This document shows, piece after piece, positions 32,283 through 54,344 of a stretch of 64,000 nucleotides of DNA. The stretch spans positions 124,001 to 188,000 of IMG/VR virus record IMGVR_UViG_3300042482_000702. One strand, 5' to 3'. Numbering within the stretch: the first letter of the stretch is position 1; each line of letters begins with the position of its first letter. The notes under the pieces were generated by a model. The model did no database searches. It was not told the DNA's origin and saw nothing but the letters and a program-made list of their open reading frames with translations. A program made the position numbers and the translations under genes.

Positions 32283-35200
32283 TTATATATTCTCAAAAGA
32301 AGCTCCGGTTGGAGTAATATAGAATGTGATATCTATAAATTCTAATGATTTGGTTGGTTTGATATAAATCTTACCAGTCATTTGATTTCTGTCTAAATCA
32401 GCAGCATCTGACGATACTGTTACACGGAAATCATATAAACCTCTATCTCTTCTGATAGCGTCCAAAATAGGGTTAACAGCGTCCAAGAAGTCTTGTCTTA
32501 CTTTAGCATCGTTTTGTTCAAACAGTAATCTTACAGATACCGCAGAAATCAATTTACGAGCTTGAAGTAATAATCTTCTAACATTGATTCTATCTAAAGC
32601 CGATTGTCTTATTTGAAGAGTTTTATTACCCCAAATTACAGTACCAACATCAGAGAAAGTAGCAATTGGGTTAATACGACCTTGATAAAGTGTGTCTCTA
32701 TCTTCTTGGGTTAGTTTACGTCTCGCTTTAACCGCATTTACAATACCTCTTGTGTAACCCGCCGCAGCGAACCAAGGGAAAGCAATGTTATCAGTTAATG
32801 CTAAATTTCTCGTAACCTCAGCCGTTGCCGGTAAGTAGATTTGAGTATTGTTAACACTATCTCTTGTTAATACCCAAGGGTAGTAAGTAGCCGTGTAGTT
32901 TGAATCAACACCTATTTGGTCTAAATTATCGACAGCTCGTTGAGGGTAAATTAAATCTGATTGGTCTCCGGTAGAAGGTACAAACATATTATAATCAGGT
33001 GTTGTACAAATATACAACGAATCCGCTCTATCGTTCTCAATCATATCAATAGCACTTTCAACTAAATCTGAATTGTTAAGATAATCAATTCCAGGTGTTA
33101 CAAAAACATTGATGTTAACCGCCTCAGGATTAGAAAATGTTCTTTGTCCTAATTTATATGCGTAATAATCGGTGTTAGCCCAATCTTCACTATTATCGCC
33201 AACAGAAATTTGTTTAAATGCTCCCCAACCTGTTGCCGCAGGATATTTAATTGATACCGCCGCTCCGTGTAAGTAACCGTTTCTACCTAAAACAAATGTA
33301 TCACCATTTGTTCTATATTCTCTATAGATATCCCACCCGTCAAAACCTCCTTGAACAAGGAAACTAAATTTACGAGAATATAGTCTATAATAAGGACTTG
33401 ATTCACTATCAGGGTCTTTTGTAAATGTTGCATCTCCAACATAAAATGCTGGTGTACCACTTGTAGTAAAAGTATTAGGAATTAAGATACTATTAGCATC
33501 TATATCCATATGGAAACCTTTAGTTCTAGTTGACCACTCATCACCTGTAGTATCATTACCAACATCTAAAGGTAATTGTTTTCCTTTATAACCAAAGAAA
33601 TTAGCATCAATACCAATACTATCAGATATACCAAGATAAGTTCTTCTAACATTGTCACCACCACTTCTAGTTGAATCGTCAGCACCTGACGCTAAACCAA
33701 ATGGGGGGTTATAAACAACCTCACCAGGATAATCGTATTTAGTTTTTATAATTGGGAATGGTGATTTAACACCTGCATAATCTCTTGAATTAAATCCTAA
33801 AAATCCACAAGGAAGAGCGTCTATAGGTGCATCTTCATTAAGTTCTAACATAACATATTTAGAATTCAATTCATATTCTCCATCTATAGAACCAACTTTC
33901 TTAGCTATAAATGAATTATCGTTAGGATTCATATTACAATTTGTAAATTTCTCAAGAACAACAGGGGCACTATCAGAATCATAAAAATCTCTAACTAATA
34001 CATCAAAAGTTCCGTTATTAAATGAAATGTTTGCTATAGATATTTTAACTTCTGTGTTAGCGGAGTCACCATCAGCTATTGTTGTAAATTTAAATAAGTT
34101 ATAAACTTTATTACCTCTTAATTCAGACACAACCCAAGGAGATGTCGGTGATTGATATTTTTCTAAATACCAAGCAATGGATGTTGCGTCGGTTTGTTGT
34201 CTTGCATCAGGTAATGCGGTTAAATTACAATTTAAACCTCTAATAAATCCTTTTCTATAACCATATGTTAATAATGTTTGATATCTTTCTTCTACAAACA
34301 ATGGTACTGTTGTTCTTGGTTTTGCAAAATTAGAAGAACCAAATACTTTACTAATATATTTAGAATCAGAATTAGATAACGAAGTTTCAAAGAAAAATTC
34401 TTCACCATCTTTATTTGTAACATTTAATCCAAAAGTAGAGAATGGATTTTTAGTAACTCCTGAATAAGTTGATGAACAATCCATTGAAACGTCTGTTAAA
34501 CCTGAAACTTCATAAACCGCACCGTCATCACTACCATAAGTCGCGATACCTCTTGAACGAAGTGTTGCAATAACTAAATCATCAAAATCGGTATAAGCAG
34601 TTCCTGAATAAACATATATTTCACCTGTAATAACCCCCAAATAACAATTTATCAATCCCCCCTCATTAGGCACACCTATGTTACCAACAACAACCGGATT
34701 ACAAACAGATTCAACCATGACAGTAACAATCCAATTTGTTGGGTTACTTCCATCTTCAGATAATAATTGATATGTTAAACTTCCACTTGAAAAATTATTA
34801 ACGGTTTCCCCACTTATTTGAGTAGAAAGTCCAATCGAAACATATCCATATGGAACACAAGTATCGAACCCACAAACGATTTTTGATAAATCAGTCCCAA
34901 CAGGTACTACAACATTTATTGTGTTGGTATTATAGTTAATACTACCAATTGTGGTTGTACCTATATCATCAACAAGAATTCTACCGAGACTACCTCCATT
35001 GATAAAAATTATATCACCAATTTGATATCCGGTACCAGGTGTATTAATCGTTACATCAGTTATGACACCTGCATCAACAGATATATCAACCGTTAATCCT
35101 TCACCAAAACCATCGGTTGTTGTTGTATAACCATTACCACCAACATATCCTGTTCCTCCTGTGAGTCCATCCAACAATGATACATATCCACCAACAGTGA

Positions 35201-36077
35201 ACCCATAGAAAGTTGAACAATCTGATGTTGTAGATATATTTGATATCTCTTCAACAATACCATAAAAAGATGAACCACTATATGAACCCCCTCCATTATT
35301 ATCAAATAATGAATAATACCAAGGGTCATTTTCTGGTGCTGTGTAATCCGCTAAATCTGAACTAACATTATTAACACCAAAAACATTTGTTGAAGCAGTA
35401 TATGATGTTAATTCTGAATAACTATCTGCTGGGATTGTACCAAAATAAGATATACCAGAATATGATTCGTCAAAATTAATTATTGAATTAAATGCCAAAT
35501 TATTAATATCTGAACGAAGTGTTGAGATACTACCATTAAATAATTCATATGGTAAATCAATTTTATTTAATAAAAATTCAGGTAAATCTGTCTCAATCAT
35601 AGTGATAGATGATATATCATTATCACAACCCGAAAATATGTAAGAATACACATATCTTTCATATTCTTCACACACAGATTCACATCCTGGTGTTAAAGTT
35701 AGACAATTAAAATCGATTGTTGTTGAATCAACATTTGCTTTTGTCGTAATTGACCAAGATGGTCCCGCATCATAACCTGAAAGTCCTAAAACTCTGGTTA
35801 CAAATAATTGATTAGATTGTTGTAAATACGCTTTAGCAATATAAGACGCCTCATATTTTGGTATTTGTGTGTTTATAAATTTTTCAGGGGAAGTTCCTCC
35901 AAAATACGCTGAGAATTCATCAAAATTTCGTATAAAAATAGGTTCGAAGGCTGGACCTTTTAAGGTTTCACCAACAATACCTAATGTAGTTACTCCCACA
36001 CTTTGGGCTACGAAACTTAAATCAACTTCAGAAGTATATACTCCAGGAGATACGAATACTTTACTGTTTGATGCCAT
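32283..36077 (-). CDS. Contractile tail sheath protein with large insertions (1264 aa)
   Basis: N-terminal FVSPGVYTSEVDLS...GETLKGP; C-terminal PWFAAAGYTRG, INPIATF, WGNKT, RINVRRLL, FEQND, IKPTKSLEFI. Confidence 0.95.
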   Translation of the reverse strand: MASNSKVFVSPGVYTSEVDLSFVAQSVGVTTLGIVGETLKGPAFEPIFIRNFDEFSAYFGGTSPEKFINTQIPKYEASYIAKAYLQQSNQLFVTRVLGLSGYDAGPSWSITTKANVDSTTIDFNCLTLTPGCESVCEEYERYVYSYIFSGCDNDISSITMIETDLPEFLLNKIDLPYELFNGSISTLRSDINNLAFNSIINFDESYSGISYFGTIPADSYSELTSYTASTNVFGVNNVSSDLADYTAPENDPWYYSLFDNNGGGSYSGSSFYGIVEEISNISTTSDCSTFYGFTVGGYVSLLDGLTGGTGYVGGNGYTTTTDGFGEGLTVDISVDAGVITDVTINTPGTGYQIGDIIFINGGSLGRILVDDIGTTTIGSINYNTNTINVVVPVGTDLSKIVCGFDTCVPYGYVSIGLSTQISGETVNNFSSGSLTYQLLSEDGSNPTNWIVTVMVESVCNPVVVGNIGVPNEGGLINCYLGVITGEIYVYSGTAYTDFDDLVIATLRSRGIATYGSDDGAVYEVSGLTDVSMDCSSTYSGVTKNPFSTFGLNVTNKDGEEFFFETSLSNSDSKYISKVFGSSNFAKPRTTVPLFVEERYQTLLTYGYRKGFIRGLNCNLTALPDARQQTDATSIAWYLEKYQSPTSPWVVSELRGNKVYNLFKFTTIADGDSANTEVKISIANISFNNGTFDVLVRDFYDSDSAPVVLEKFTNCNMNPNDNSFIAKKVGSIDGEYELNSKYVMLELNEDAPIDALPCGFLGFNSRDYAGVKSPFPIIKTKYDYPGEVVYNPPFGLASGADDSTRSGGDNVRRTYLGISDSIGIDANFFGYKGKQLPLDVGNDTTGDEWSTRTKGFHMDIDANSILIPNTFTTSGTPAFYVGDATFTKDPDSESSPYYRLYSRKFSFLVQGGFDGWDIYREYRTNGDTFVLGRNGYLHGAAVSIKYPAATGWGAFKQISVGDNSEDWANTDYYAYKLGQRTFSNPEAVNINVFVTPGIDYLNNSDLVESAIDMIENDRADSLYICTTPDYNMFVPSTGDQSDLIYPQRAVDNLDQIGVDSNYTATYYPWVLTRDSVNNTQIYLPATAEVTRNLALTDNIAFPWFAAAGYTRGIVNAVKARRKLTQEDRDTLYQGRINPIATFSDVGTVIWGNKTLQIRQSALDRINVRRLLLQARKLISAVSVRLLFEQNDAKVRQDFLDAVNPILDAIRRDRGLYDFRVTVSSDAADLDRNQMTGKIYIKPTKSLEFIDITFYITPTGASFENI

Positions 36078-37391: not shown

Positions 37392-37826
37392 TTATTTTGT
37401 TATAAAAATTTTATTTTTTAAATTAATCATCTCCACTTCATTGGCATGAAATATAGGTTCTTCGGTGTCTTTCATAACATAAGAATTATATTTGTATGGA
37501 TTGTAGGTGACAATATTATTGTTAGGTTCTTCTGGTAAATTCTCACAAGGGAACTCACAATAATCCATTAAAGTTCCAATAACAAATGAATGTACATTTT
37601 TACTTTTTTCTCTAACCACTCTTTCTCTACCACCTTGTCTAACTCTAAATTCGACATCTTCTAATTTAACATAATCGGAGTGTGAAATTAATCTACCCTT
37701 GTATGTTACCGAAAAGGTGTGTTTATGTAGGTTATAATAAACCATTACTTTTTTACCAATATAATCGTCATCTGAATAAATTTCAAATAATCTTTTTGCT
37801 TGAGATTCTGTTATTAATATTTTCAT
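37392..37826 (-). CDS. Phage hypothetical protein with MKILITE leader
   Basis: VYYNLHK...FRVRQGGRERV..EK.KNVH.F.IG...YNPY core; N-terminus MKILITESQ. Confidence 0.75.
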   Translation of the reverse strand: MKILITESQAKRLFEIYSDDDYIGKKVMVYYNLHKHTFSVTYKGRLISHSDYVKLEDVEFRVRQGGRERVVREKSKNVHSFVIGTLMDYCEFPCENLPEEPNNNIVTYNPYKYNSYVMKDTEEPIFHANEVEMINLKNKIFITK

Positions 37827-38215
37827 TAGTCGGCTACGATTGTTTTTACTGGTAAATCAAAGTTATCTTTAAACCATTCTTTCATAGGTTCTATCCAATA
37901 ACTACCAAACATATTGGTTAATTTTTCATAATCATTAACAATTAATATCGGTGTCTTTTCTTTAAAAGATTTACTCGAAGGTTCATCGCTATAATATTCC
38001 TTTTGAATATATACAAAAGCAACACCATCTTGGTCGTAATCACCTTCATATATATGATAAAAATACTCTCGTATATATGGGTTTTCCTCATCATCATATT
38101 CATCATCATTCCATGTGGTTGGATGAAAATAATCTATGTTACTTACATCAAAAGTATCTTCAAGATAATTATATATTGTTCTATATAATTTATTTTCTGT
38201 TATTAATATTTTCAT
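37826..38215 (-). CDS. Acidic aromatic-rich hypothetical protein, paralog B
   Basis: Tandem paralog of 38215-38601; TAATG stop/start overlap. Confidence 0.8.
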   Translation of the reverse strand: MKILITENKLYRTIYNYLEDTFDVSNIDYFHPTTWNDDEYDDEENPYIREYFYHIYEGDYDQDGVAFVYIQKEYYSDEPSSKSFKEKTPILIVNDYEKLTNMFGSYWIEPMKEWFKDNFDLPVKTIVAD

Positions 38216-38601
38216 TAGTCGGCTACGATTGTTTTTACGGGTAATTTATAATTATCTTCGAACCATTTTTTCATAGGGTCTTTCCAATAATTTCCAAACA
38301 TACTTGACAAATTTTGCCAATCATGTCCATTAACTGATAATATTGGTGATTTATCTTTCAAAGGGTTTGATGAAGGTTCATTACTGTAGTATTCATAAGA
38401 ATAATAACTAAAAACCCACTTTTCATCCTCACCCCACGTATCGTAATAAAAATCTGTAATATATGGATTTTCAATCTCACTCATTTCCTCATCATCCCAA
38501 ACTTCAGGATGAGACGGTTCTAAATTAGATATGTCAAAAGTATCTTCAATATAATTATATATTGTTCTATATAATTTATTTTCTGTTATTAATATTTTCA
38601 T
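38215..38601 (-). CDS. Acidic aromatic-rich hypothetical protein, paralog A
   Basis: Shares MKILITENKLYRTIYNY and LPVKTIVAD termini with its neighbour. Confidence 0.8.
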   Translation of the reverse strand: MKILITENKLYRTIYNYIEDTFDISNLEPSHPEVWDDEEMSEIENPYITDFYYDTWGEDEKWVFSYYSYEYYSNEPSSNPLKDKSPILSVNGHDWQNLSSMFGNYWKDPMKKWFEDNYKLPVKTIVAD

Positions 38602-39485: not shown

Positions 39486-41261
39486 TTGGAAAACAATATA
39501 CCTGAAAATTCTAATTTAACAGTAGAACAACGAGCAATATCTCTTCTTGAAACTTATCAAGGGGCAAACAACTACATCCTAAAATTAAAATTTCAAAAGG
39601 AAACAAATAAAAGATTCTTCCCCACAAGAGCTCAATCGGACTATATAATAAATTATCACGAAGTGACTCCAAAGGTTGCTAAAAGATGGGTTGATTTAGA
39701 CCCGTACTTCGCCAAAAAAATTGCTGACGAAAAATTATTACTTACAATTCCTGAACAAATATGGGTGGAAAAGTTGTTAGTTGAGAAAGAAAAATCATAT
39801 CATGTTTGGGGTAAAGTTCTATCCGGTGAAACTATCCACGATTTTTGGTTACCAAAAGGTGCGTTAATTAAAACACATACTATTAAAGATGTTGTTGTTG
39901 ATTATGATAAATACTCTAATCGTCCACCACTTGAACATCAAAAACTTGCAATTGAGAAACTTGCCGGGTCTAAAAGATTTATTTTAGCTGATGATATGGG
40001 ACTTGGTAAAACCACGGCAACGATTATTGCGGCTTTAGAGACGGGAGCAAAGAAAATATTAATTGTTTGTCCGGCATCTTTAAAGATTAACTGGCAGAGA
40101 GAGATTGAGAACTATACCGACAGAAGTGTTTATATCTCTGAAGGTAAGAATTTCTCAATAGAACACGATTTTGTTATTGTTAATTACGATATTCTTAAAA
40201 ACTTTTATGATTTAAAAAATAAAGACAATTCTTTAATCACTCAAGGAAATTTTGATTTAATTATCTTGGATGAAGCGCATTATGTGAGTAATGGACAAGC
40301 CGCGAGAACCAAACTTGTTAATAGTTTTTCTAAAAATTGTGAAAGAGTGTGGTTGTTAACGGGGACACCTATGACAAATCGTCCGATGAATTATTTTAAT
40401 TTATTATCTCTTATTGAGAGTCCTGTTTCACAAAATTGGATGGCTTACGCTATTAGATATTGTCAAGGTTATCAATTTATGGCGGGGAAAAGAAAAATAT
40501 GGAATGTTTCGGGAGCATCAAATTTAGAAGAATTAAGAGACAGAACATCAAGGCAAGTATTGAGAAGATTAAAGACTGAAGTTTTAGATTTACCTGAAAA
40601 AATTATTACACCAATTTATTTAAGATTAAAATCAAAACTTTATGAAGGGTTGATGGGAGAATACTATGATTGGTATAATAAAAACCCTGACGAATCAACA
40701 TCGCTTACCGTTCAGTTCAGTAAGTTAATGAAAGTTCGTCAAGTGATTGCCGAAGAAAAAGTTAAGGACACAATAGAATTAGCTGAAAATATTTTGGAAC
40801 AAGATAAAAAAGTTATCATCTTCACCAATTTTACTGAAACATTAAATCAAATTGCTGACCATTTTGGTAAACAAGCGGTTAAATTAGACGGCTCAACATC
40901 AAAACCTCAACGACAATATGCTGTTGACCAATTCCAAGATAATGAGAAAATTAAAGTGTTTGTTGGGAATGTTAAGGCTGCCGGTGTAGGAATTACTTTA
41001 ACCGCCGCTGAAGCTGTAATCATTAATGACCTATCTTTTGTTCCGGGAGACCTAGCTCAAGCAGAAGATAGAGCATACAGATATGGACAAAAAAATTCGG
41101 TATCAGTTTATTACCCAATATTCGATAATAGTATAGAAGGAATCATTTATGATATGGTAAATCATAAGAAACAAAATATTGGAACCGTAATGGGTGATAA
41201 TATAGAAGAGAAGGGTGATTTCATCGGAGAACTTATGAATAAAATTAACAACCGAGGTTAA
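39486..41261 (+). CDS. SNF2-family (SMARCAL1/HARP-like) helicase
   Basis: LADDMGLGKT, CPASL, DEAH, TGTP, RRLK, GITLT, QAEDRAYRYGQ. TTG start with TTGATA-17-TATATT upstream. Confidence 0.93.
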   Translation: MENNIPENSNLTVEQRAISLLETYQGANNYILKLKFQKETNKRFFPTRAQSDYIINYHEVTPKVAKRWVDLDPYFAKKIADEKLLLTIPEQIWVEKLLVEKEKSYHVWGKVLSGETIHDFWLPKGALIKTHTIKDVVVDYDKYSNRPPLEHQKLAIEKLAGSKRFILADDMGLGKTTATIIAALETGAKKILIVCPASLKINWQREIENYTDRSVYISEGKNFSIEHDFVIVNYDILKNFYDLKNKDNSLITQGNFDLIILDEAHYVSNGQAARTKLVNSFSKNCERVWLLTGTPMTNRPMNYFNLLSLIESPVSQNWMAYAIRYCQGYQFMAGKRKIWNVSGASNLEELRDRTSRQVLRRLKTEVLDLPEKIITPIYLRLKSKLYEGLMGEYYDWYNKNPDESTSLTVQFSKLMKVRQVIAEEKVKDTIELAENILEQDKKVIIFTNFTETLNQIADHFGKQAVKLDGSTSKPQRQYAVDQFQDNEKIKVFVGNVKAAGVGITLTAAEAVIINDLSFVPGDLAQAEDRAYRYGQKNSVSVYYPIFDNSIEGIIYDMVNHKKQNIGTVMGDNIEEKGDFIGELMNKINNRG

Positions 41262-41303
41262 TTCAGTTGTTAAGATATTTATAAGAATAACAAAATAAGC
41301 CAA

Positions 41304-42842
41304 ATGAAAAAGATTGAAAAAAAAATCAATCTCATAACAGAAGAACTAAAAAAAGTTGAAACCCACGAAAATCAACAAATGTTCATTAATGAGATGAAAA
41401 AAATAGGGATAGAAAAATTACCCTACGCCTATTCAGCACTAAAACAATTTATTGATGCTGAAACAATGGATTACCATTACAATAAACACTATAAAGGATA
41501 TGTTGATAAACTAAATTCCGCTCTTAAAAAGAAAGATTATGGTGATTTAGAATTAGAAGAAATTATTAAATCAATAAGTAGATTTGATAAGACAATTAGG
41601 AACAATGCCGGAGGAGCCTTTAACCACGCATTGTTTTGGAAAATGTTAACTCCAAAAAAACAAACACCAAATGGTGAAATTATTAGGCAAATTAAAAAAG
41701 ATTTTACTACCTTTGTCAAGTTTAAAAATAAGTTTGAGGAAATTGCTCAAGAAAAATTTGGTTCAGGTTGGGTTTGGTTAGTTTTAACAAAACGAAATAC
41801 CTTAAAAATCGTAACCACAGAAAATCAAGACAATCCTCTTATGAATGTTATAGATGATGGTGGTTATCCAATACTAGGATTAGATTTATGGGAACACGCA
41901 TATTATTTAAAATATAGAAACAAAAAAAATGACTATGTTAAGAATTTTTGGAAATGTGTTAATTGGGAATTTGTTAATAAACTATATACAATGAGAATTG
42001 AAACTAAATTAAATGAAAGTTTAAATTTTAAGTCTGTTATTTCTGAAGGTAAGTCTGAAAGATGTGGTAGAGAAGAGAACGAAGCTATTCGTATGGTTTT
42101 TAATATTAACCCAAAAATTAAACAAATTTTTATGGAAGGTATTAACCACATCCTTAAAGAAGTTTTTCCGGATAACTATTATGGGTATGGTGAATACGCT
42201 AAAGGTGAAATGTCTGGTGTGTATGATTTAGAAAGAGATGGTCGTTCTGTATTAAATAAATTAAACACAAACTATAGTTGTTTCTGTGTTCTTCTTAACG
42301 ACACAAATCAAGTTTTAAAATCTACAAATTTACCTGAAATTAAAATTGTTGGTTTAAAACCATTGGAACAAATTGAAGAAACTAAAAAATTACTTATTTT
42401 CTTACACGAATATAAATTTAGAATATTCAAACAAACCTCCGCAACATTTCAAAACATTATGAAAGTTTTAACCCAAACAGATACTTGGGGTCAATCTCGT
42501 GAAGATAAAACTATTGAGATTTTAAAGAAAAAATTTGGAAAAGATAATGTTAACGCCATCGGTAAATTAGGTAGTAAAGCTGATATGATTGGTGGTATAG
42601 ATTGTGAAGTTATTATTAATGGTAGAAAATTAAGTAGTCAAATTAAACCTTTTGGAAGTATTGAAACAACCGGTGAAGAAATTACTGTTATTGGTTCAGG
42701 AGCCGTTAAAAAATACTATACAGATTGGTTAATTTTCACTAGAAATAATAAAGATGTTTTAATTTTCAGAAATAAAAATTCAAAAATTGTTAATGGACAA
42801 TATGTTTTTCCTAAAGGAGATTTAATTTATTCATTAAATTGA
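41304..42842 (+). CDS. Mn/Fe superoxide dismutase fused to a C-terminal PD-(D/E)XK-like domain
   Basis: SOD ligands intact: LPY...HYNKH, NNAGGAFNHALFW, FGSGWVWL, NQDNP, DLWEHAYY. About 280 extra residues with G..RE...D...GID...QIK. Confidence 0.9.
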   Translation: MKKIEKKINLITEELKKVETHENQQMFINEMKKIGIEKLPYAYSALKQFIDAETMDYHYNKHYKGYVDKLNSALKKKDYGDLELEEIIKSISRFDKTIRNNAGGAFNHALFWKMLTPKKQTPNGEIIRQIKKDFTTFVKFKNKFEEIAQEKFGSGWVWLVLTKRNTLKIVTTENQDNPLMNVIDDGGYPILGLDLWEHAYYLKYRNKKNDYVKNFWKCVNWEFVNKLYTMRIETKLNESLNFKSVISEGKSERCGREENEAIRMVFNINPKIKQIFMEGINHILKEVFPDNYYGYGEYAKGEMSGVYDLERDGRSVLNKLNTNYSCFCVLLNDTNQVLKSTNLPEIKIVGLKPLEQIEETKKLLIFLHEYKFRIFKQTSATFQNIMKVLTQTDTWGQSREDKTIEILKKKFGKDNVNAIGKLGSKADMIGGIDCEVIINGRKLSSQIKPFGSIETTGEEITVIGSGAVKKYYTDWLIFTRNNKDVLIFRNKNSKIVNGQYVFPKGDLIYSLN

Positions 42843-42863: not shown

Positions 42864-43976
42864 ATGTCAATAATTCCAGAACCTCAAAGAACCGCGTTAT
42901 ACACAAGAATTAAACATTTACTTGGAGCACCACTTCGTTCAATAGAAATTGAAGACGAAATGATGGATAGTTTATTAGAATTATCTATCGGTGATTATTC
43001 TCAATATGTCCAAGATTGGTTAATAGAATCTCAATGGACATCCTTATATAATCTTAATCTTGATACTCAATCATTATCAAAAGCTTTTATAACAAAAAGT
43101 TTAGATTTTGAAACGAGATACACTTATGCGTATTCTAAAATTGTTGGATTACAGGCTGGTGGAGATTGGGAACTTAAAAAAGATTACATTCAACTTGAGC
43201 GTTACCAACAAATATATGAAATTCCAGCAAATAGAGAAATTAATGAAGTTTTATGGTTTACACCTGCAGAACTTAATAATTTATTGTTTGACCCTTGGAC
43301 TTTTGGGGCTTTAGGTGCCGGTGGTTTAGGTGGTCCGGGTGGTTTTTCACAAATGGGTATGTCGGGTTCATTTTTTATGATGCCAGCGTTTGATATGTTA
43401 TTGAGAATGCAAGAAATTAATATTCAAAGAAGAATAATTGCGGGTGACTTAACATATAGAATTACAGCTCTTCCTGAAGGTAAAAAGGCATTACACTTAA
43501 TGAATACACCTGGTGGTAAATTTGACTTCGGTAATGCAACCTTAACAAGAGGTAAAGTATGGTATTGGTATTATGATGTTGGTCCGGCGGATAGGGATAA
43601 GTGTTTGAAAGCAAACCCTGATATTATTACACTTCCATCTGATGTTCCATTTGAAGAAATTTCTTGGTCTGATTTAAATAATCCTGCACAACAATGGGTT
43701 AGAAGATGGTTCACGGCGTATGTTAAACAAACATTGGCGAGAGTTAGAGGTAAATTTAGTGGAAATGTTAAAACACCGGATAGTGAATTAACTATGGATT
43801 ACGCATCATTAGCAACAGAAGGTGCTGACGAAAAATCAAAACTTGAAGAAGAATTAAAATTAAGGTTGGAGAGATTACGACCTGATAAAATGATGGAAAG
43901 GGAAGCTTTATTAGCGGAGAATTTAAATAAATCTTTGAAATTTAGAGCAATGCCAAGACAAATTTATGTAATTTAA
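42864..43976 (+). CDS. Neck / head-tail adaptor protein (gp13-like)
   Basis: RIKHLLGAP...IEIED, WVRRWFTA.VK..LARVRGKF, L..EG..EK..LEEEL. Confidence 0.7.
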   Translation: MSIIPEPQRTALYTRIKHLLGAPLRSIEIEDEMMDSLLELSIGDYSQYVQDWLIESQWTSLYNLNLDTQSLSKAFITKSLDFETRYTYAYSKIVGLQAGGDWELKKDYIQLERYQQIYEIPANREINEVLWFTPAELNNLLFDPWTFGALGAGGLGGPGGFSQMGMSGSFFMMPAFDMLLRMQEINIQRRIIAGDLTYRITALPEGKKALHLMNTPGGKFDFGNATLTRGKVWYWYYDVGPADRDKCLKANPDIITLPSDVPFEEISWSDLNNPAQQWVRRWFTAYVKQTLARVRGKFSGNVKTPDSELTMDYASLATEGADEKSKLEEELKLRLERLRPDKMMEREALLAENLNKSLKFRAMPRQIYVI

Positions 43977-44341: not shown

Positions 44342-44372
44342 AAAAAAGGTGTCGTATTCGACACCTTTTCTG
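44341..44372. terminator. Bidirectional intrinsic terminator between convergent genes
   Basis: AAAAGGTGTCG-tatt-CGACACCTTTT with A and T tracts on both sides. Confidence 0.85.
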
Positions 44373-47255: not shown

Positions 47256-48359
47256 TTAGGACCTAATTTCTGTGGCAAAACAAATTTCACCTCGTTCTCT
47301 TATCAATCTTTCCATATCGGCAAATGATATATACGCGTGTCCCGATTGACCCCAAGATTGACCCCAACTATTTTTAATTCTAAATAGTCGTGTAACGGTA
47401 TTCACACCATTAATAACATAAGCGTGTCCACCGGCAATACGACCACTAATTTTAATTAAACCATTTCTATTAGGGTAAAACATTCCATTATACCAATTAG
47501 TTCCAACTACAACAGGACCTAAATTTAAAACGGAATTTATTAAAGTTGTTAAATTAAATCCCCAATAATAAGAAGAAACTTTACCAACACTTTGTAAGTA
47601 TTTAACACCTCCTCTAACTGAAGTTCCAGCGTAGTTTTCACCTACCCATTCATCAAGTTTTTGAGCGTTTTCATATATAATTCTAGGTGGTATTATTGGA
47701 GCAATTCCACTTTGAGGTACCGGACCATCTTCTAACCAATGAGCCCAAGCGTACCCAACACATTGGGGTGTATTACCTTGATTACCCCACCATCCATTAT
47801 CATCCCAATATCTGTTGGTAATTCTAACAGGTGCGGCGGTTAAAATATTATTAATTGAATATTTGTGGTCTCTTTCATCAGGAACATATTGTCTACCCAA
47901 TTGATATGTTCTATTAATACTTTCCACCAAAACTGTTGGTTCGTTAACACAACAAGGAAATTCTGAAACATAACAACTATCATAAACCAAATCATCAGCA
48001 ATGAAGGATTCCTGAACATTAATATTAAGTTTTTCTCTAATTGGTAAGATAAGTACACCATCAGAATTTCTTAACATAAACTCACCCTCATATCTACCAA
48101 CACGATTAGTGTCTTTGGATGTGAATTGGTAGTATATGTAATATTCTGGTTCGGCGTTGGGGTCCATTGAGGTTTTCTCAACAAATCCGCCCGGTCTTGA
48201 AGTAATTTTTGGTATTCCCGTTTCTACATCTACCATTGAAAAGAAAATTGACGATAACTCTATGGTTTTCATAAAATTATTGTAATCACTTCTTCCATCT
48301 TTTACGACTTGGAATTTTAAAACAGGTAAAGTCGAGTTTTTCTTAATAAAAAAATCCAT
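47256..48359 (-). CDS. BppU-like N-terminal domain fused to a papain-family (C1) cysteine peptidase
   Basis: N-term FIKKNSTLP...YQFT..DT...G.YEGEF...ILP; C-term NQGNTPQCVGYA, GPVVVG, GGHAY, IKNSWGQSWG. Confidence 0.85.
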   Translation of the reverse strand: MDFFIKKNSTLPVLKFQVVKDGRSDYNNFMKTIELSSIFFSMVDVETGIPKITSRPGGFVEKTSMDPNAEPEYYIYYQFTSKDTNRVGRYEGEFMLRNSDGVLILPIREKLNINVQESFIADDLVYDSCYVSEFPCCVNEPTVLVESINRTYQLGRQYVPDERDHKYSINNILTAAPVRITNRYWDDNGWWGNQGNTPQCVGYAWAHWLEDGPVPQSGIAPIIPPRIIYENAQKLDEWVGENYAGTSVRGGVKYLQSVGKVSSYYWGFNLTTLINSVLNLGPVVVGTNWYNGMFYPNRNGLIKISGRIAGGHAYVINGVNTVTRLFRIKNSWGQSWGQSGHAYISFADMERLIRERGEICFATEIRS

Positions 48360-48405: not shown

Positions 48406-50757
48406 TTAACTCTCTTTTCTTAATGAACCATCATAATGTTCAAAGCGATTGTGTTCTGTTGGTGTTAACAATAATAATCCCGGATTGATTTTCCCTTTGA
48501 CGGTTTCTTGATAACTATAAGACATTAATGTTTGTTCGTAAGGATGAGACCATTTAGTTTCTAAATAACATCTGTAATTACCCTCTCTCGATAAGACAAT
48601 CGGCCAATTTGAAAGATAAACTTCTCCAGTAACATACGGTAATCCTTTGTGAATATGAATTTCGTTAAATTTTGTTTTTGGAGAATTGGGGTCTAAACCT
48701 TGTACGGGTAATTTAGGGTTATTTGGCCAATGTTTTTGTCTGAAATCTTGGGGTACATTATACCAACTCCATTGTACACTATTATCACCAAAAAATTCAC
48801 TAAAATTAAGTTTAAGGAAATCAAAATTTTCTTTAGAAAGTATATCTAACGATTTCTGATATAAGTTATCTACAAATCTTGGGAATCCATTTCTACAAAC
48901 CTCACCTTTTTTAGGGTAAAACGCCATGTCATCCTCAAACCACCAGTAACAATCCAAATCAGTTTCATCGAAATGTTCAGCAACAAATACTCTACCACCA
49001 ACAATACCAATATTATCCTTCTTAATGTGTTCAAAACCATATTGTTCACATAATTCAATATATCTCGGTGTTGTGGTTAAATCAGTTGAATTATCTAATA
49101 AGAATTTCTTTGGTTTCTCAACAAAATCTTTATCATAGTCCAACATAGATTGGATAAGAACCTCTAATTGTTTTGGTGAATTAAATGTGATTACATAAAG
49201 ACCCACTTTTGAAGTGTCCAATTTATTCACAACAACATCTTTAGACACTTCTGATTTAACCTCAACTGTCATATCTTTTAAATCCTCAAAGAATTTACCC
49301 ATTAATCCATTACCCTCAATTTCTGAATAACTAATTAAATTAGGATATTTGTAAGTCATAATCGTAAATAACGACTCTTCAGTTCCCATTAATCCTTGTG
49401 ATAAAGTATCATTCATTAACCCATAATAGATTGAATTAATTTCAGATATTGTATCTTTTTTACCTCCGAAGAAACCTGCTCTGGCAACCATATTAACAGG
49501 TTTGCCAGCTAATTCACATAACTCTTGATACTTAAATCCATGAATTTCACTATTGGCATCATACGGGAAACAAACAAAGTGAAAATTCTTAATTAATTTA
49601 GGTAATTTATCTAAAACTTTGTCGTGGGTAAAATATCCAGGATGAATTGTATTGGTTAATCCGGCATCAATCCAAAACATATATTCTGAATCAAATTTAT
49701 CTAATATTTTCGCATCGTGTAAAAGATAAATTTTAGACATAACCAAAGGGTTGTACATTTCTAATTTAGCTTGAGTTGATTCTGTTAACCAACCAACTTG
49801 ATTATACCAATCAGGGTTAGTTCTTATTTTTTGAATTTTATCGTAAAAATCATTATTTTTAAACCAAGATAAATCTCTACGAACAAATTGAGTGTTTTCA
49901 CTACGTCTGTTGTTTAATACAAATTTTTCTAACTCTTCATCACCAAAAATTATCATATTTACATCAACTTGTAATAGTTGTTGGAATTTATCTAAATAAT
50001 GTTGGAATGAACGAGACCATCCTTCTTGGAGGTCTCCCCTACCTATATCCCATAACCCTGTTACTAATGTTGTTATATTGTTAGACTTAGTTGTCTCAAC
50101 CTTTACAACATCATTCTTAACTATTATTGAATTTTTTTTATATCCACCCACTTGAGTAACAACTTCAATCACATTATTCTCAATACCTCTTAATTCAAAG
50201 AAGTCCTTAATTGCCGCTTCAACACCTGGTAAATCATTTCTTTTGTAATCGTGGAAAAATATATAACCACCATCAACAACTCTATCATAAACCTTAACTA
50301 AACTATCATATATTGAATCATAAAAATCTCCATCAAGAAATGCGAATGAAATTTTTTCAGGTAATCTATCGTTTGGAATATCACAAAACCAACCTTTTGT
50401 TATTATTGGTGGAGGTAAATTATTTTCAATAAAATTACTTGTTAAAACGTCTTCACTGGTTACTAATGTTCTAGGTCTCCAACCCGTATTAATTTCCCAT
50501 TTAGATAAATCCGGCAACCCTTCAAAAGAATCATATACATATAATTTTTTATCAGAATTAGTTTCAATTAGGGTTTTCATTAGGTATTTACTTGATTCAC
50601 CAACGTAACAACCTAGTTCAACAACATCTCCGTCTATATCATTCTCAATTGCATCTAACAAATATTCAACTAATTTTTTTATTTGTTCACCATTAATTAT
50701 TGATGAGTCCACTTGTTTATTGTGGAAATTCATTATTTCATTTAAAAAATTTTTCAT
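48406..50757 (-). CDS. Three-domain enzyme: TylF/MycF-type sugar O-methyltransferase + HtrL/WlaTC-like glycosyltransferase + GT-A (GT2-like) domain
   Basis: GDVVELGC.VG, YDSFEGLP, KGWF, FLDGDFY, GG...HDY; TLVTGLWDIGR...RS...YL, WIDAG, GFFGG, TEES; VITFN, LDNS, NIG, FEDD. Confidence 0.8.
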   Translation of the reverse strand: MKNFLNEIMNFHNKQVDSSIINGEQIKKLVEYLLDAIENDIDGDVVELGCYVGESSKYLMKTLIETNSDKKLYVYDSFEGLPDLSKWEINTGWRPRTLVTSEDVLTSNFIENNLPPPIITKGWFCDIPNDRLPEKISFAFLDGDFYDSIYDSLVKVYDRVVDGGYIFFHDYKRNDLPGVEAAIKDFFELRGIENNVIEVVTQVGGYKKNSIIVKNDVVKVETTKSNNITTLVTGLWDIGRGDLQEGWSRSFQHYLDKFQQLLQVDVNMIIFGDEELEKFVLNNRRSENTQFVRRDLSWFKNNDFYDKIQKIRTNPDWYNQVGWLTESTQAKLEMYNPLVMSKIYLLHDAKILDKFDSEYMFWIDAGLTNTIHPGYFTHDKVLDKLPKLIKNFHFVCFPYDANSEIHGFKYQELCELAGKPVNMVARAGFFGGKKDTISEINSIYYGLMNDTLSQGLMGTEESLFTIMTYKYPNLISYSEIEGNGLMGKFFEDLKDMTVEVKSEVSKDVVVNKLDTSKVGLYVITFNSPKQLEVLIQSMLDYDKDFVEKPKKFLLDNSTDLTTTPRYIELCEQYGFEHIKKDNIGIVGGRVFVAEHFDETDLDCYWWFEDDMAFYPKKGEVCRNGFPRFVDNLYQKSLDILSKENFDFLKLNFSEFFGDNSVQWSWYNVPQDFRQKHWPNNPKLPVQGLDPNSPKTKFNEIHIHKGLPYVTGEVYLSNWPIVLSREGNYRCYLETKWSHPYEQTLMSYSYQETVKGKINPGLLLLTPTEHNRFEHYDGSLRKES

Positions 50758-50763
50758 ATTTTA

Positions 50764-51393
50764 CTATTTTTTTTGTCTACAAGTCCATACAACATTTTCA
50801 AAAATGTCTTTATCGTAATATTCTAAATTATGTTCGACACAAGATAAATTTATATCATTATTTGAAATTTCAAACCAATTCCATAATTTTTTATTAATTT
50901 TTTCTTCAAAAATTTCTTTATTTTCTGAATAATCATGGGCCATAATAAAATCACCAACTTTAATATATTTTGATAAAATATTAAATTCCCTAATTTTATC
51001 ACCACCATCACATAAAACTAAAGTTAACCCATCTTGTTGAATAAAATCAATAACTTCTTGGTCCACATTTTGATAATTTTCATAAAAAACATTTTTAATT
51101 CTTATATCAATACCAGTTTTTATTATATCCTTATACCAACTATGTTCCACAATATCATACGATAAAATATCAATAGGGTGTTTAAGTTCGTTTGATGACC
51201 ATTGTAAAAATTGTGTAAATCCACCAAGAGCGGTACCAATTTCTAAAATTCTTTTTGGTTTTGTTTTATTTAAAAAGTTATAAAATACTTCATAAACTTT
51301 ATCGGTTTGTTGGGAACTTAATCCCATAAATGATGATAACCCATCATTTTGGTCTAAATTAATTCTTCGAGTAATGTTGTCGTTTAAACTCAT
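50764..51393 (-). CDS. Class I SAM-dependent methyltransferase (CmcI/Methyltransf_24-like)
   Basis: RILEIGTALGG, SYDI, LCDGG, GD..MAHDY. Confidence 0.75.
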   Translation of the reverse strand: MSLNDNITRRINLDQNDGLSSFMGLSSQQTDKVYEVFYNFLNKTKPKRILEIGTALGGFTQFLQWSSNELKHPIDILSYDIVEHSWYKDIIKTGIDIRIKNVFYENYQNVDQEVIDFIQQDGLTLVLCDGGDKIREFNILSKYIKVGDFIMAHDYSENKEIFEEKINKKLWNWFEISNNDINLSCVEHNLEYYDKDIFENVVWTCRQKK

Positions 51394-51394
51394 T

Positions 51395-52252
51395 CTATAA
51401 CGTTATAATTTTTTTTAATAGATTATTTTCTTGGAAATATCTTTTTTTAATTTCTCTTAATCCAATTATTTTTTGTTGATATATTTCATCACTATTTTCA
51501 ATTATAGTTTTTAATAATTGTTCTATAGAATCAACATCATTTATATCATCAATTAAAATATAACCATCTTCCGGGTATATTTCTTTAATATTTTTACAAC
51601 CAAAATAAATAGGTATAGTATCGGTTAATATGTTGTCATAAAATTTTTCAGTAATCCAATTTTTTTCATATGAATTTTCAATTGAAATATTAAATTTATA
51701 ATCTACTAATGCGTCTTTACGTTTTGGGCTAATATTGCCATCATAAACATCTATTCCGTTTATTTCTTTAATTCTTTCTAAAATATTAACTCTTTGAGGG
51801 TATAAACAAGTTCCTCCATAATCAGTATTTAATCTTGTGATTGAACTAGATATTATCTTAGTTTTATTAAATGTTGATTTTAATAGATTATCGTAACACC
51901 AAAAATCTAATGTGTCAACCCAAGGGCCTCTACCACCATAAAAAGTATGTGCAATAGATTCTTTAAAATTACCAACATATAATTCTTTTGAAAATCCACA
52001 AATAACAGTATCACTTATAAAATGTTTTTGATGTGTACCAATCCAGGAAGGTTCGTGGGGAAATACAAATGATTTAGAATTTGGTTTAATCTCAACATTA
52101 GTGTAATTAAAAAAAACTATAGTATCGTAAGAGTCGTCATAAACAAACTCTATATTAGTCAAATCAATTTCCGGTGTTTTAAACTGCTTAAGTAATCTTT
52201 CTGTTAAATTTTCCGAAGAATCGTAATTTGCGGATATTTTTATTTTTTTCAT
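51395..52252 (-). CDS. GT10-family (alpha-1,3/4-fucosyltransferase-like) glycosyltransferase
   Basis: K..ALVDYKFNISIENS....WITEKFYD......PIYFG. Start probably ATG 52252, an ATGA overlap with the upstream stop. Confidence 0.85.
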   Translation of the reverse strand: MKKIKISANYDSSENLTERLLKQFKTPEIDLTNIEFVYDDSYDTIVFFNYTNVEIKPNSKSFVFPHEPSWIGTHQKHFISDTVICGFSKELYVGNFKESIAHTFYGGRGPWVDTLDFWCYDNLLKSTFNKTKIISSSITRLNTDYGGTCLYPQRVNILERIKEINGIDVYDGNISPKRKDALVDYKFNISIENSYEKNWITEKFYDNILTDTIPIYFGCKNIKEIYPEDGYILIDDINDVDSIEQLLKTIIENSDEIYQQKIIGLREIKKRYFQENNLLKKIITL

Positions 52253-53031: not shown

Positions 53032-53041
53032 ATTTAAATTT

Positions 53042-53782: not shown

Positions 53783-53783
53783 A

Positions 53784-54341: not shown

Positions 54342-54344
54342 ATT

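What the first reader, a model, noticed from the sequence alone, without database searches (positions are those of the whole stretch)
41304..42842. Superoxide dismutase fused to a restriction-endonuclease-like domain, possibly a protease-processed polyprotein
Seen: a complete SOD with Mn-type signatures (GG before NH, NQD), preceded by a ~35-aa leader (LITEE, FINE) and followed by a linker (KLNES...VISE) and a ~270-aa domain with WGQSRE...DMIGGID.....SQIKP. That pattern fits PD-(D/E)XK nucleases with a QxK variant. SODs are normally standalone ~200-aa proteins. The gene sits beside the neck gene and has the late-type motif. Inference: a packaged protein cut into SOD and nuclease-like moieties and delivered on infection, for oxidative protection plus host-DNA attack or anti-defence.
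Basis: partly seen in the sequence, partly recalled or inferred. Interest (0 to 1): 0.7.

Follow-up and report, generated by a model that had tools for sequence, protein, structure and literature searches.

The report
Phage SOD–nuclease precursor with protease sites
A large freshwater T4-like phage encodes one late protein made of a short leader, a complete manganese-type superoxide dismutase and a Holliday-junction-resolvase-like nuclease domain, joined by flexible linkers carrying the cutting motif of the phage's own head protease; this suggests, but does not prove, that both enzymes are packed into the capsid and released as separate proteins.

Summary
ORF 41304-42842 (+, 512 aa) is real and unbroken in independent metagenomes. 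About half of 80 related viral contigs carry it, always between an SNF2 helicase gene and the T4 gp13-type neck gene.

- **SOD:** residues 36-226 are a complete Fe/Mn SOD with all four metal ligands invariant.
- **C-terminal part:** residues ~249-512 match no Pfam or PHROG family but fold confidently (pLDDT 92.5) into a helical lobe plus a PD-(D/E)XK lobe closest to Hjc resolvases. E400, D433, Q446 and K448 are invariant or nearly so.
- **SOD as an insert:** orthologues without the SOD keep the same ~30-aa leader joined directly to the C-domain, so the SOD is an optional module.
- **Cleavage-type motifs:** four (L/I)-x-E motifs sit only in the leader and linker, the least conserved and lowest-confidence segments, and exactly flank the SOD.
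- **Protease link:** the genome encodes a T4-type (S77) prohead protease, and its capsid protein carries "INE|A" at the T4 gp23 cleavage position.
- **Promoter:** the gene shares a promoter motif with the protease, scaffold and neck genes.

Best reading (about 0.5): a capsid-targeted precursor cut into free SOD and a nuclease. Packaging, cleavage and both activities are untested. Main rival: a cytoplasmic late resolvase.

The parts
41274..41284 (+). Promoter-like motif A (GATATTTATAA), 28 nt upstream of the ATG
   Evidence: Most enriched upstream 8-mer family in the 322-kb genome (12x). It also precedes the prohead protease, scaffold, gp13, a baseplate wedge gene and a virion structural protein gene. 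Late timing is inferred, not measured.
41304..42842 (+). Whole ORF, 512 aa plus stop: leader - SOD - linker - two-lobed C-domain
   Evidence: Continuous in independent assemblies. Orthologous locus in 80 IMG/VR contigs.
41304..41393 (+). N-terminal leader, residues 1-30, predicted helix; candidate capsid-targeting propeptide
   Evidence: Helix 2-31 with low to moderate confidence. The same leader is present on SOD-less orthologues such as P0055 and P0006. No other protein of the genome shares it.
41334..41342 (+). Site A: I11-T12-E13, an (L/I)xE motif inside the leader
   Evidence: 86% [LI]xE across 63 fused sequences; P2 variable.
41385..41393 (+). Site B: I28-N29-E30, an (L/I)xE motif immediately before the SOD N-terminus (M31-KKIGIEKLPY)
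   Evidence: E is 62/62 and P3 is L/I in 61/62, with P2 variable. Same tripeptide as the capsid protein's INE|A. Lies in the pLDDT<50 segment 19-42.
41394..42017 (+). Fe/Mn-family superoxide dismutase module, residues 31-238 (Pfam domains at 36-115 and 122-226)
   Evidence: Pfam 1e-23 and 2.6e-39. Ligands H58, H108, D194 and H198 plus H62, Y66 and Q175 are invariant in 29 sequences down to 44% identity. Most conserved part of the protein, mean column conservation 0.87.
42009..42017 (+). Site C: L236-N237-E238, an (L/I)xE motif at the SOD C-terminus
   Evidence: E is 62/62 and P3 is L/I in 60/63. Lies in the pLDDT<50 segment 235-249.
42018..42047 (+). Ten-residue spacer (239-248) ending in site D, I246-S247-E248
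   Evidence: E is 62/63 and P3 is L/I in 60/63, with P2 variable. Orthologous to the site at the end of the leader in SOD-less forms (VLSE|SKAEKC). Retained in 30/30 of the 294/309-aa forms but only 3/8 of the 277-278-aa forms.
42069..42476 (+). Helical N-lobe of the C-domain, residues ~256-391, with the conserved motif GRSxLNxxNTNY; function unknown
   Evidence: pLDDT above 90. No convincing structural or sequence match.
42477..42839 (+). PD-(D/E)XK nuclease-like lobe, residues ~392-512, closest to Hjc resolvases
   Evidence: VIA: Hjc 2wcw Z 8.0, I-Ssp6803I 7.3, NhoI 7.3, HhaI 6.9. Foldseek PDB, AFDB and Swiss-Prot searches return the same class.
42501..42647 (+). Putative catalytic residues E400, D427, D433, Q446 and K448
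   Evidence: G396, D433, Q446 and K448 are invariant; E400 and D427 are at least 90% conserved in 62 family members down to ~22% identity. They sit on the long helix (E400), at the start of a strand (D433) and on the next strand (Q446-x-K448), which is the canonical placement.
39486..41261 (+). Upstream neighbour: SNF2-family helicase
   Evidence: Pfam and PHROG hits. Upstream in 66/66 related loci.
42864..43976 (+). Downstream neighbour: distant T4 gp13-type neck protein with its own motif A promoter
   Evidence: phrog_211. PF26809 on orthologues. Directly downstream in 69/71 related loci.
44342..44371 (.). Bidirectional terminator-like hairpin closing the four-gene plus-strand block

Best explanation
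The gene encodes a late precursor of a freshwater/aquatic T4-like jumbo myovirus, built as leader (1-30) - Mn-type SOD (31-238) - 10-aa spacer - two-lobed protein whose last ~120 aa are an Hjc-like PD-(D/E)XK nuclease.

The ancestral gene was leader plus nuclease-like protein, at a fixed locus between the SNF2 helicase and gp13 neck genes. The SOD was inserted behind the leader and is present in about half of the relatives.

The most likely mechanism (inferred, not shown) has three steps:
1. The leader acts like a T4 capsid-targeting propeptide and brings the precursor into the prohead.
2. The phage's T4-type prohead protease cuts after Glu at the conserved (L/I)xE sites: E30|M31, E238|S239 and E248|G249. 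This releases a normal-sized SOD of 208 aa and a ~264-aa nuclease-like protein inside the capsid.
3. Both travel with the DNA into the next host. The SOD would lower superoxide at the onset of infection, and the nuclease would act on DNA (target unknown).

Shown here: the domain identities, the fold, residue conservation, motif placement, synteny, the optional nature of the SOD, and the presence of the protease. Inferred: packaging, cleavage, ejection and both activities.
For: 1. The fusion is real. Contigs from four independent runs span both junctions, 42 of 79 related loci are fused, and there are very many ~512-aa homologues.
2. The SOD is intact and under the strongest constraint. All ligands are invariant and column conservation is 0.87, against 0.73 for the C-domain and 0.63 for leader and linker.
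3. The C-lobe has a PD-(D/E)XK fold by two independent aligners and four libraries, with E400, D433, Q446 and K448 conserved.
4. Across all 512 columns only five triplets are at least 80% [LI]xE. One is the SOD active-site DLWEH. The other four are the leader and linker sites, with variable P2 and variable neighbours. Proteome background for [LI]xE is 0.0127 per residue.
5. Sites B and C sit exactly at the native N- and C-termini of the SOD fold. The boundary segments 19-42 and 235-249 are the only pLDDT<50 stretches, and pTM 0.52 indicates independent modules.
6. The genome encodes Peptidase_S77 at 84.9 bits and a gp23-type capsid protein. The capsid protein reads ASFLINE|ATSDG where T4 gp23 reads GSFLTE65|AEIGG. 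T4 IPI's leader ends STITE|A. The protease itself has GILIE18, like T4 gp21's LIE-9 (PMC9026906).
7. T4 leaders of 10-20 aa target even foreign proteins, nucleases included, into heads, where gp21 removes them (PMC9026906; PMC9958956; PMC5694885).
8. SOD-less orthologues keep leader plus site D plus C-domain. P0006 keeps a SOD stub (EMKKIEIEKL), which shows deletion of the module.
9. Promoter motif A is shared with the protease, scaffold, gp13, baseplate and virion-protein genes. Motif B precedes a primase and a DNA-binding protein gene.
10. There is a precedent for a late-expressed, virion-packaged SOD in chlorovirus PBCV-1 (PMC7019647).
Against: - There are no proteomic, expression or biochemical data. 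No cultured relative exists: the nearest capsid proteins are 42-44% identical.
- The leader is not shared with any other protein of the genome, unlike the T4 IPII/IPIII leaders.
- In the short-leader 277-278-aa orthologues, 5 of 8 have lost the Glu at site D, so cleavage there cannot be essential to the C-domain's function.
- Distant family members lack a leader altogether.
- A nuclease packed next to the phage's own DNA needs some form of restraint, and none is identified.
- Q replaces the usual acidic residue in the (D/E)xK motif, so catalysis is not assured.
- Motif A also precedes a DNA methyltransferase gene and lies 66 nt before polB, so 'late' is an inference.
- The protease-linker docking job gave no verdict.
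Confidence: 0.5

Rival explanations
1. A cytoplasmic (non-virion) late enzyme. The Hjc-like lobe would be the phage's Holliday-junction or branch-resolving nuclease, needed to clear branched DNA before or during packaging, which is the role of T4 gp49. The helical lobe would provide DNA binding or dimerisation. The SOD would be a covalently attached accessory with no proteolytic release, and the leader would be an oligomerisation helix.
For: - The best structural matches are consistently Hjc resolvases: Z 8.0 and 10 of the top 22 Swiss-Prot models.
- No endonuclease VII, RuvC, RusA or Hjc Pfam family reaches threshold anywhere in the genome, so a resolvase function is otherwise unassigned.
- The late-type promoter and position beside head-completion genes fit a packaging-linked enzyme.
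- Short-leader orthologues that lost site D and leaderless distant members show the C-domain works without cleavage.
Against: - It does not explain why four (L/I)xE motifs with invariant Glu are maintained only in the flexible leader and linkers, exactly at the SOD boundaries.
- It does not explain why the motif matches the capsid protein's own maturation site.
- It does not explain why an SOD would be tethered to a resolvase in about half of the lineages.
- Hjc family membership fails at the sequence level, and the ExK Glu is Gln.
- Absence of other resolvase families was tested with only four Pfam models.
Confidence: 0.25
2. A catalytically inactive, nuclease-derived DNA-binding or head-completion component. 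It would be packaged or neck-associated and would bind DNA, for example DNA ends in the manner of T4 gp2, rather than cutting it. The SOD would be cargo.
For: - Invariant adjacency to the gp13 neck gene: 69/71 loci.
- Q in place of the acidic residue of (D/E)xK.
- No T4 gp2 homologue detectable in the genome.
- An inert protein avoids the problem of a live nuclease stored with the genome.
Against: - No profile similarity to T4 gp2: hhalign probability 0.06%.
- E400, D427, D433 and K448 remain invariant or nearly so across ~22-75% identity, which is typical of retained catalysis.
- QxK and NxK variants are active in some type II enzymes (HinP1I, MspI; from my own knowledge).
Confidence: 0.12
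3. A mobile homing endonuclease (like the PD-(D/E)XK enzyme I-Ssp6803I or the PDDEXK_5 intron-associated nucleases) that happened to land next to, or fuse with, an SOD gene; or an assembly or frameshift artefact.
For: I-Ssp6803I and PDDEXK_5 proteins are among the structural matches.
Against: - Fixed synteny in every relative: SNF2 upstream in 66/66 and gp13 downstream in 69/71 loci.
- No intron or intein context.
- The variable element is the SOD, not the nuclease.
- Independent reads and assemblies confirm the open frame.
Confidence: 0.02

Closest known systems
T4 internal head proteins and Alt (IPI, IPII, IPIII, gpAlt) with capsid-targeting propeptides removed by the gp21 prohead protease
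   Same: - A short N-terminal leader ending in (L/I)xE.
- A T4-type S77 protease and gp23-type capsid protein in the same genome.
- A non-essential cargo that varies between related phages.
- In T4, foreign enzymes placed behind the leader, nucleases included, are packaged, processed and delivered (PMC9026906, PMC9958956).
   Different: - No sequence similarity to any T4 internal protein.
- The leader is ~30 aa and unique in its genome.
- The proposed substrate is a two-cargo polyprotein with internal cleavage sites, which is not described for T4.
- Packaging and cleavage are not demonstrated here.
Fe/Mn superoxide dismutases (SodA type; Pfam PF00081 + PF02777)
   Same: Both domains, all four metal ligands and the second-shell residues are present. 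Identity to cellular SODs is 44-48%.
   Different: The SOD is embedded in a 512-aa protein between a leader and a nuclease-like domain. Cellular and most phage SODs are free-standing proteins of ~200 aa.
Hjc archaeal Holliday-junction resolvases and related small PD-(D/E)XK nucleases (I-Ssp6803I, NhoI, PDDEXK_5)
   Same: The same core fold over ~100 residues (Z 6-8), with Glu on the first helix, Asp at the strand start and x-K on the next strand.
   Different: - No sequence-family membership.
- Gln replaces the Glu of ExK.
- There is an extra, unmatched ~140-aa helical lobe.
- Substrate and activity are unknown.
Virion-packaged Cu/Zn SOD of chlorovirus PBCV-1 (A245R)
   Same: A virus-encoded SOD expressed late and carried in the particle, proposed to lower superoxide early in the next infection (PMC7019647).
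   Different: It is a different SOD family (Cu/Zn, not Fe/Mn), a eukaryotic virus and a free-standing protein, with no protease-site architecture. Packaging is shown there and only inferred here.

Membership tests
Fe/Mn superoxide dismutase | Both Pfam domains (Sod_Fe_N, Sod_Fe_C) above the gathering threshold | tested here: met
   84.0 and 133.8 bits against cut-offs of 27 and 20.9.
Fe/Mn superoxide dismutase | Four metal ligands (His, His, Asp, His) and the gateway His/Tyr | tested here: met
   H58, H108, D194, H198, H62 and Y66 are invariant in 29 fused sequences. The mapping to E. coli SodA H26/H81/D167/H171 is from my own knowledge.
Fe/Mn superoxide dismutase | Mn-type discriminators (Gly-Gly before the second His; Gln in the N-Q-D motif) | tested here: met
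   A102-G103-G104 and N174-Q175-D176 are present and invariant or nearly so. The rule itself is from my own knowledge. Metal specificity is not testable here.
Fe/Mn superoxide dismutase | Superoxide dismutase activity | not testable with these tools
   Needs an enzyme assay.
PD-(D/E)XK nuclease superfamily | Core alpha-beta-beta-beta-alpha-beta fold | tested here: met
   Model pLDDT 92.5. All of the top 16 VIA matches (Z 5.4-8.0) belong to this superfamily. Foldseek PDB, AFDB and Swiss-Prot searches agree.
PD-(D/E)XK nuclease superfamily | Catalytic signature: Glu on helix 1, Asp on strand 2, (D/E)-x-K on strand 3 | tested here: inconclusive
   E400, D433 and K448 are conserved and placed canonically, but the (D/E) position is an invariant Gln, Q446.
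PD-(D/E)XK nuclease superfamily | Nuclease activity | not testable with these tools
   Needs biochemistry.
Hjc resolvase family (PF01870) | Match to the family profile | tested here: not met
   No Pfam hit for the protein or for 62 family members. PF01870 finds nothing in the genome.
Hjc resolvase family (PF01870) | Small (~120-140 aa) single-domain protein with an E-D-E-K catalytic set | tested here: not met
   An extra 140-aa helical lobe, and Gln in place of the second Glu.
T4-type capsid-targeted, protease-processed head proteins | N-terminal propeptide ending in the protease motif (L/I)-x-E | tested here: met
   Sites A and B in the leader, and site D in SOD-less orthologues. Conservation is 86-97% with variable P2.
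T4-type capsid-targeted, protease-processed head proteins | Cognate T4-type prohead protease, with the same motif used by the capsid protein | tested here: met
   Peptidase_S77 at 84.9 bits. Capsid protein INE|A aligns with T4 gp23 LTE65|A.
T4-type capsid-targeted, protease-processed head proteins | Late expression | tested here: inconclusive
   The promoter motif is shared with the protease, scaffold, neck and baseplate genes, but also with a methyltransferase gene. There are no timing data.
T4-type capsid-targeted, protease-processed head proteins | Physical presence in the head and actual cleavage | not testable with these tools
   Needs virion proteomics. The docking attempt gave no verdict.
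T4 gp2 DNA-end protector | Sequence or profile similarity to gp2 | tested here: not met
   hhalign probability 0.06%.
Homing endonuclease (I-Ssp6803I / PDDEXK_5 type) | Sporadic, mobile distribution or intron/intein association | tested here: not met
   Fixed locus: SNF2 upstream in 66/66 and gp13 downstream in 69/71 loci.

The most novel reading that the evidence does not exclude
A natural capsid-targeted polyprotein. A clade of aquatic T4-like jumbo phages would use a propeptide and their head-maturation protease to load, separate and later inject two enzymes, a manganese SOD and an Hjc-like nuclease. The SOD would be a plug-in module inserted behind an existing targeting leader. This would be the first phage shown to carry an antioxidant enzyme in its capsid. 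It would also be a natural counterpart of the engineered T4 leader-cargo packaging system.
Probability: 0.45. Interest if true: 0.75.

Novelty: new variant of a known kind. Interest (0 to 1): 0.62.

Why it matters
- **Cargo beyond T4 internal proteins.** If the precursor is packaged and cut as the motifs suggest, T4-type phages would be shown to diversify their injected cargo by inserting whole enzymes behind a targeting leader and bracketing them with protease sites. That would be a modular, evolvable delivery system, so far known only from laboratory engineering of T4.
- **Oxidative stress at the start of infection.** An injected SOD would mean that superoxide at the first moments of infection is a selective pressure on phages of oxygenated, sunlit waters. 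This parallels the packaged SOD of chloroviruses.
- **A new nuclease family.** The C-domain is a widespread family, about 180 clusters at 50% identity and exclusively viral in the Atlas clusters listed. It has no annotation, a confident model and a clear candidate active site, so it is an easy target for biochemistry.
- **Annotation.** Hundreds of database entries named only 'superoxide dismutase' are really three-part proteins.

Tried and rejected
- **Sequence searches of the C-domain.** Pfam, PHROGs and a PDB sequence-profile search found nothing significant. Only single-member sub-threshold hits to Mrr_cat_2 and RE_EcoO109I appeared.
- **tblastn against 50,697 phage records.** Only the SOD part matched. 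No catalogued phage carries the C-domain.
- **Leader HMM against the genome's own ORFs.** No other protein shares the leader. There is no C-domain paralogue either.
- **T4 gp2 as a homologue.** Rejected.
- **The 119-aa downstream ORF as gp14.** No similarity.
- **Atlas feature search for the helical N-lobe.** No usable hit.
- **Docking of the prohead protease with linker residues 224-262.** 'No answer'; this is not evidence either way.
- **First C-domain tree.** It suggested about 11 SOD gains or losses. Part of that was an artefact: P0004, P0022, P0124 and P0140 are gene calls truncated at contig ends. On 80 complete loci only two changes are needed. Further changes rest on more distant leader-bearing forms (P0123, P0129, P0132).
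- **The search for related loci with the divergent alignment.** Failed; repeated with the single protein.
- **Contexts of distant leaderless members (P0198, P0203, P0207).** They lie on short contigs and are uninformative.
- **Model coordinates.** Not exposed, so catalytic residues could not be superposed on Hjc.
Full report
**Setting.** The window is bases 124001-188000 of a 322,477-bp viral contig rated complete, with about 30% G+C. The genome encodes a T4 gp23-type major capsid protein and a Peptidase_S77 (T4 gp21-type) prohead protease. It also encodes a contractile sheath, a baseplate hub and a family-B DNA polymerase. Its capsid protein is only 42-44% identical to the nearest cultured phages, Microcystis phage Mel-JY01 and Flavobacterium phage immuto. 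The gene's DNA occurs almost unchanged in more than a dozen lake, freshwater and estuary metagenomes from different studies. So this is an uncultured aquatic T4-like jumbo myovirus.

ORF 41304-42842 (+) encodes 512 residues. Residues 36-115 and 122-226 match the two Fe/Mn SOD Pfam domains far above threshold. Contigs from four independent runs, one of them a metatranscriptome library, bridge the leader-SOD and SOD-linker junctions with no indel inside the frame. The fusion is therefore not an assembly or frameshift artefact.

**The SOD looks functional.** In 29 fused proteins down to 44% identity, the four metal ligands (H58, H108, D194, H198) are invariant. So are the gateway residues H62 and Y66 and the Gln of N-Q-D. 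The Gly-Gly and NQD features point to the Mn type; that rule is from my own knowledge. The SOD is the most conserved part of the protein, with mean column conservation 0.87 against 0.73 for the C-domain and 0.63 for leader and linker.

**The C-terminal part.**
- Residues ~249-512 match nothing in Pfam, PHROGs or PDB sequences.
- They do define a family: 284 hits in the word-indexed search and 182 clusters at 50% identity in the exhaustive search. In the Atlas clusters listed the family is exclusively viral.
- A 62-member alignment has G396, D433, Q446 and K448 invariant, and E400, D427, G431 and Y471 at least 90% conserved.
- AlphaFold2 gives a confident model (pLDDT 92.5, pTM 0.87): a helical lobe followed by an alpha/beta lobe.
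- Foldseek against PDB, an independent all-against-all aligner, AFDB clusters and Swiss-Prot models all place the last ~120 residues in the PD-(D/E)XK superfamily. The closest matches are Hjc junction resolvases (Z 8.0), then I-Ssp6803I, NhoI, HhaI, DpnI and PvuII.
- The conserved residues fall on the canonical elements: Glu on the long helix, Asp at a strand start, and Q-x-K on the next strand.
- The Q-for-acid substitution leaves activity open, although QxK and NxK enzymes such as HinP1I and MspI are active (from my own knowledge).
- The helical lobe (about residues 256-391, with the motif GRSxLNxxNTNY) has no match.

**The SOD is an optional insert at a fixed locus.**
- Across 80 related IMG/VR loci, the SNF2 helicase gene lies upstream in 66/66 and a gp13-type neck gene directly downstream in 69/71. 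Forty-two genes carry the SOD and 38 do not.
- The SOD-less orthologues keep the same N-terminal leader joined directly to the C-domain. The 294-aa form reads MKNTENKVNLIIEEIKK...TLVLSE|SKAEKC.
- The 309-aa form still contains the first residues of the SOD (EMKKIEIEKL), which shows deletion of the module.
- On complete genes two state changes suffice. More are implied by distant leader-bearing forms interleaved with fused ones. An initial higher count was inflated by gene calls truncated at contig ends.

**Protease-type motifs mark the module boundaries.**
- In 63 fused sequences, four (L/I)-x-E triplets are conserved: I11-x-E13 (86%), L/I28-x-E30 (97%; Glu 62/62), L/I236-x-E238 (95%; Glu 62/62) and L/I246-x-E248 (95%). 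The middle residue and the neighbouring columns are variable.
- Over all 512 columns, the only other triplet conserved at this level is the SOD active-site DLWEH. Proteome background for the motif is 0.0127 per residue.
- E30|M31 and E238|S239 lie exactly at the natural ends of an SOD fold, so cutting there would release a 208-aa SOD.
- In the full-length model the only segments below pLDDT 50 are 19-42 and 235-249, which carry these sites. pTM 0.52 indicates independent modules.

**Link to the phage's own protease.**
- T4 gp21 cuts C-terminal to Glu after a short motif. It removes 10-20-residue targeting propeptides from the internal proteins and Alt, and 65 residues from gp23 (PMC9958956, PMC9026906 and PMC5694885).
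- T4 gp23 reads GSFLTE65|AEIGG. This phage's capsid protein reads ASFLINE|ATSDG at the corresponding place, the same I-N-E that precedes the SOD.
- T4 IPI's leader ends STITE|A.
- The protease here has GILIE18 near its N-terminus, like T4 gp21's LIE-9.
- In T4, foreign proteins placed behind such a leader, including EcoRI and staphylococcal nuclease, are packaged, processed and delivered. That offers a direct rationale for inserting an SOD behind an existing leader.

**Expression signal.**
- The most enriched upstream motif in the genome, (G)ATATTTATAA(ATAAA), lies 28 nt before this gene. It also lies before the prohead protease, scaffold, gp13, a baseplate wedge connector and a virion structural protein gene.
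- A second motif, TAtcTTTG, precedes a primase and a DNA-binding protein gene. It resembles the Bacteroidota -7 element (my own knowledge).
- This fits late transcription but does not prove it. The first motif also precedes a DNA methyltransferase gene.

**Weighing the explanations.** The capsid-targeted, protease-processed precursor explains the leader, the motif placement, the flexible boundaries, the optional SOD, the promoter and the neighbourhood. I give it about 0.5.

The main rival, at about 0.25, is a cytoplasmic late junction-resolving nuclease.
- For it: the closest fold is Hjc, and no endonuclease VII, RuvC, RusA or Hjc family is detectable in the genome.
- For it: five of eight short-leader orthologues have lost the Glu at the last site, and distant family members have no leader. 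The C-domain therefore does not depend on cleavage.
- Against it: it leaves the boundary motifs and the SOD tether unexplained.

An inert DNA-binding or head-completion role is less likely, at about 0.12, given the conserved acidic and lysine residues and no similarity to T4 gp2. A homing endonuclease or an artefact is excluded by synteny and reads.

**Novelty.** I found no paper on a phage SOD fused to a nuclease or packaged in a phage capsid. The closest precedent is the late-expressed, virion-packaged Cu/Zn SOD of chlorovirus PBCV-1. Database entries for this family are named only 'superoxide dismutase' or 'hypothetical protein'. I rate it a new variant of a known kind, namely T4-type processed head cargo, pending proteomic proof.

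Noticed in passing
L038:4780-4900 and L039 (relatives of the P0154 lineage): In two independent samples the fused gene is interrupted at an A9 run (TTCAAAAAAAAACTTTTGTAA). The leader-SOD ORF stops after 287 aa, and the intact C-domain continues in another frame. This could be a real frameshift, or a slippage site giving both an SOD-only and a full-length product.
   Followed up: partly
Whole genome G000; in the window e.g. 41274-41284 and upstream of 42864: There are two distinct upstream motifs. ATATTTATAA(ATAAA) precedes about 50 genes, many of them structural. TAtcTTTG(T) precedes about 19 genes, including a primase and a DNA-binding protein gene, and resembles the Bacteroidota sigma-A -7 element. 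That suggests a Bacteroidota host and host-RNAP-driven early genes.
   Followed up: partly
IMG/VR loci L109-L117: A third orthologue class of 277-278 aa has the leader shortened to ~13 residues (MNNNENKVSLVLSE|TKAEKC). Five of eight copies have lost the Glu of the motif (LVLIQ, LILST).
   Followed up: partly
window 37826-38215 and 38215-38601 (minus strand): Two tandem paralogous genes of 129 and 128 aa begin with the identical MKILITENKLYRTIYNY... and end in ...LPVKTIVAD. They have no family match.
   Followed up: no
window 48406-55592 (minus strand): A cluster of sugar- and methyl-transfer genes: TylF-type O-methyltransferase fused to HtrL/YibB, an FtsJ-like methyltransferase, a GT10 fucosyltransferase-like protein and a GlcNAc-transferase. 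These could be for DNA or virion glycan modification. That would be relevant if the packaged nuclease has to spare phage DNA.
   Followed up: no
window 47256-48359 (minus strand): A 367-aa protein with a papain-family (Peptidase_C1) cysteine protease region and phrog_16701 'peptidase'. It is preceded by the structural-type promoter motif.
   Followed up: no
window 32283-36077 (minus strand): The tail sheath protein is unusually long at 1264 aa. The sheath homology is confined to the last ~210 residues.
   Followed up: no
P0206 (1109 aa) and BFVD A0A8D9CCA0 (1113 aa, uncultured marine phage): The same two-lobed C-domain also occurs at the C-terminus of a ~1100-aa protein with no Pfam domains, so the domain has other fusion partners.
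   Followed up: no
Genome G000:C1:242014-242739 (minus strand): The prohead protease carries GILIE18 near its N-terminus, matching its own presumed cleavage motif. T4 gp21 has LIE-9 in the same way.
   Followed up: no
Whole genome G000: No endonuclease VII, RuvC, RusA or Hjc Pfam family reaches threshold. The only trace is a 14-bit endonuclease VII-like hit at C1:29336-29416. The phage's junction resolvase is therefore unassigned.
   Followed up: partly
window 44342-44371: A bidirectional terminator-like hairpin with an 11-13 bp stem lies between the end of the plus-strand block and the convergent DNA polymerase gene.
   Followed up: no
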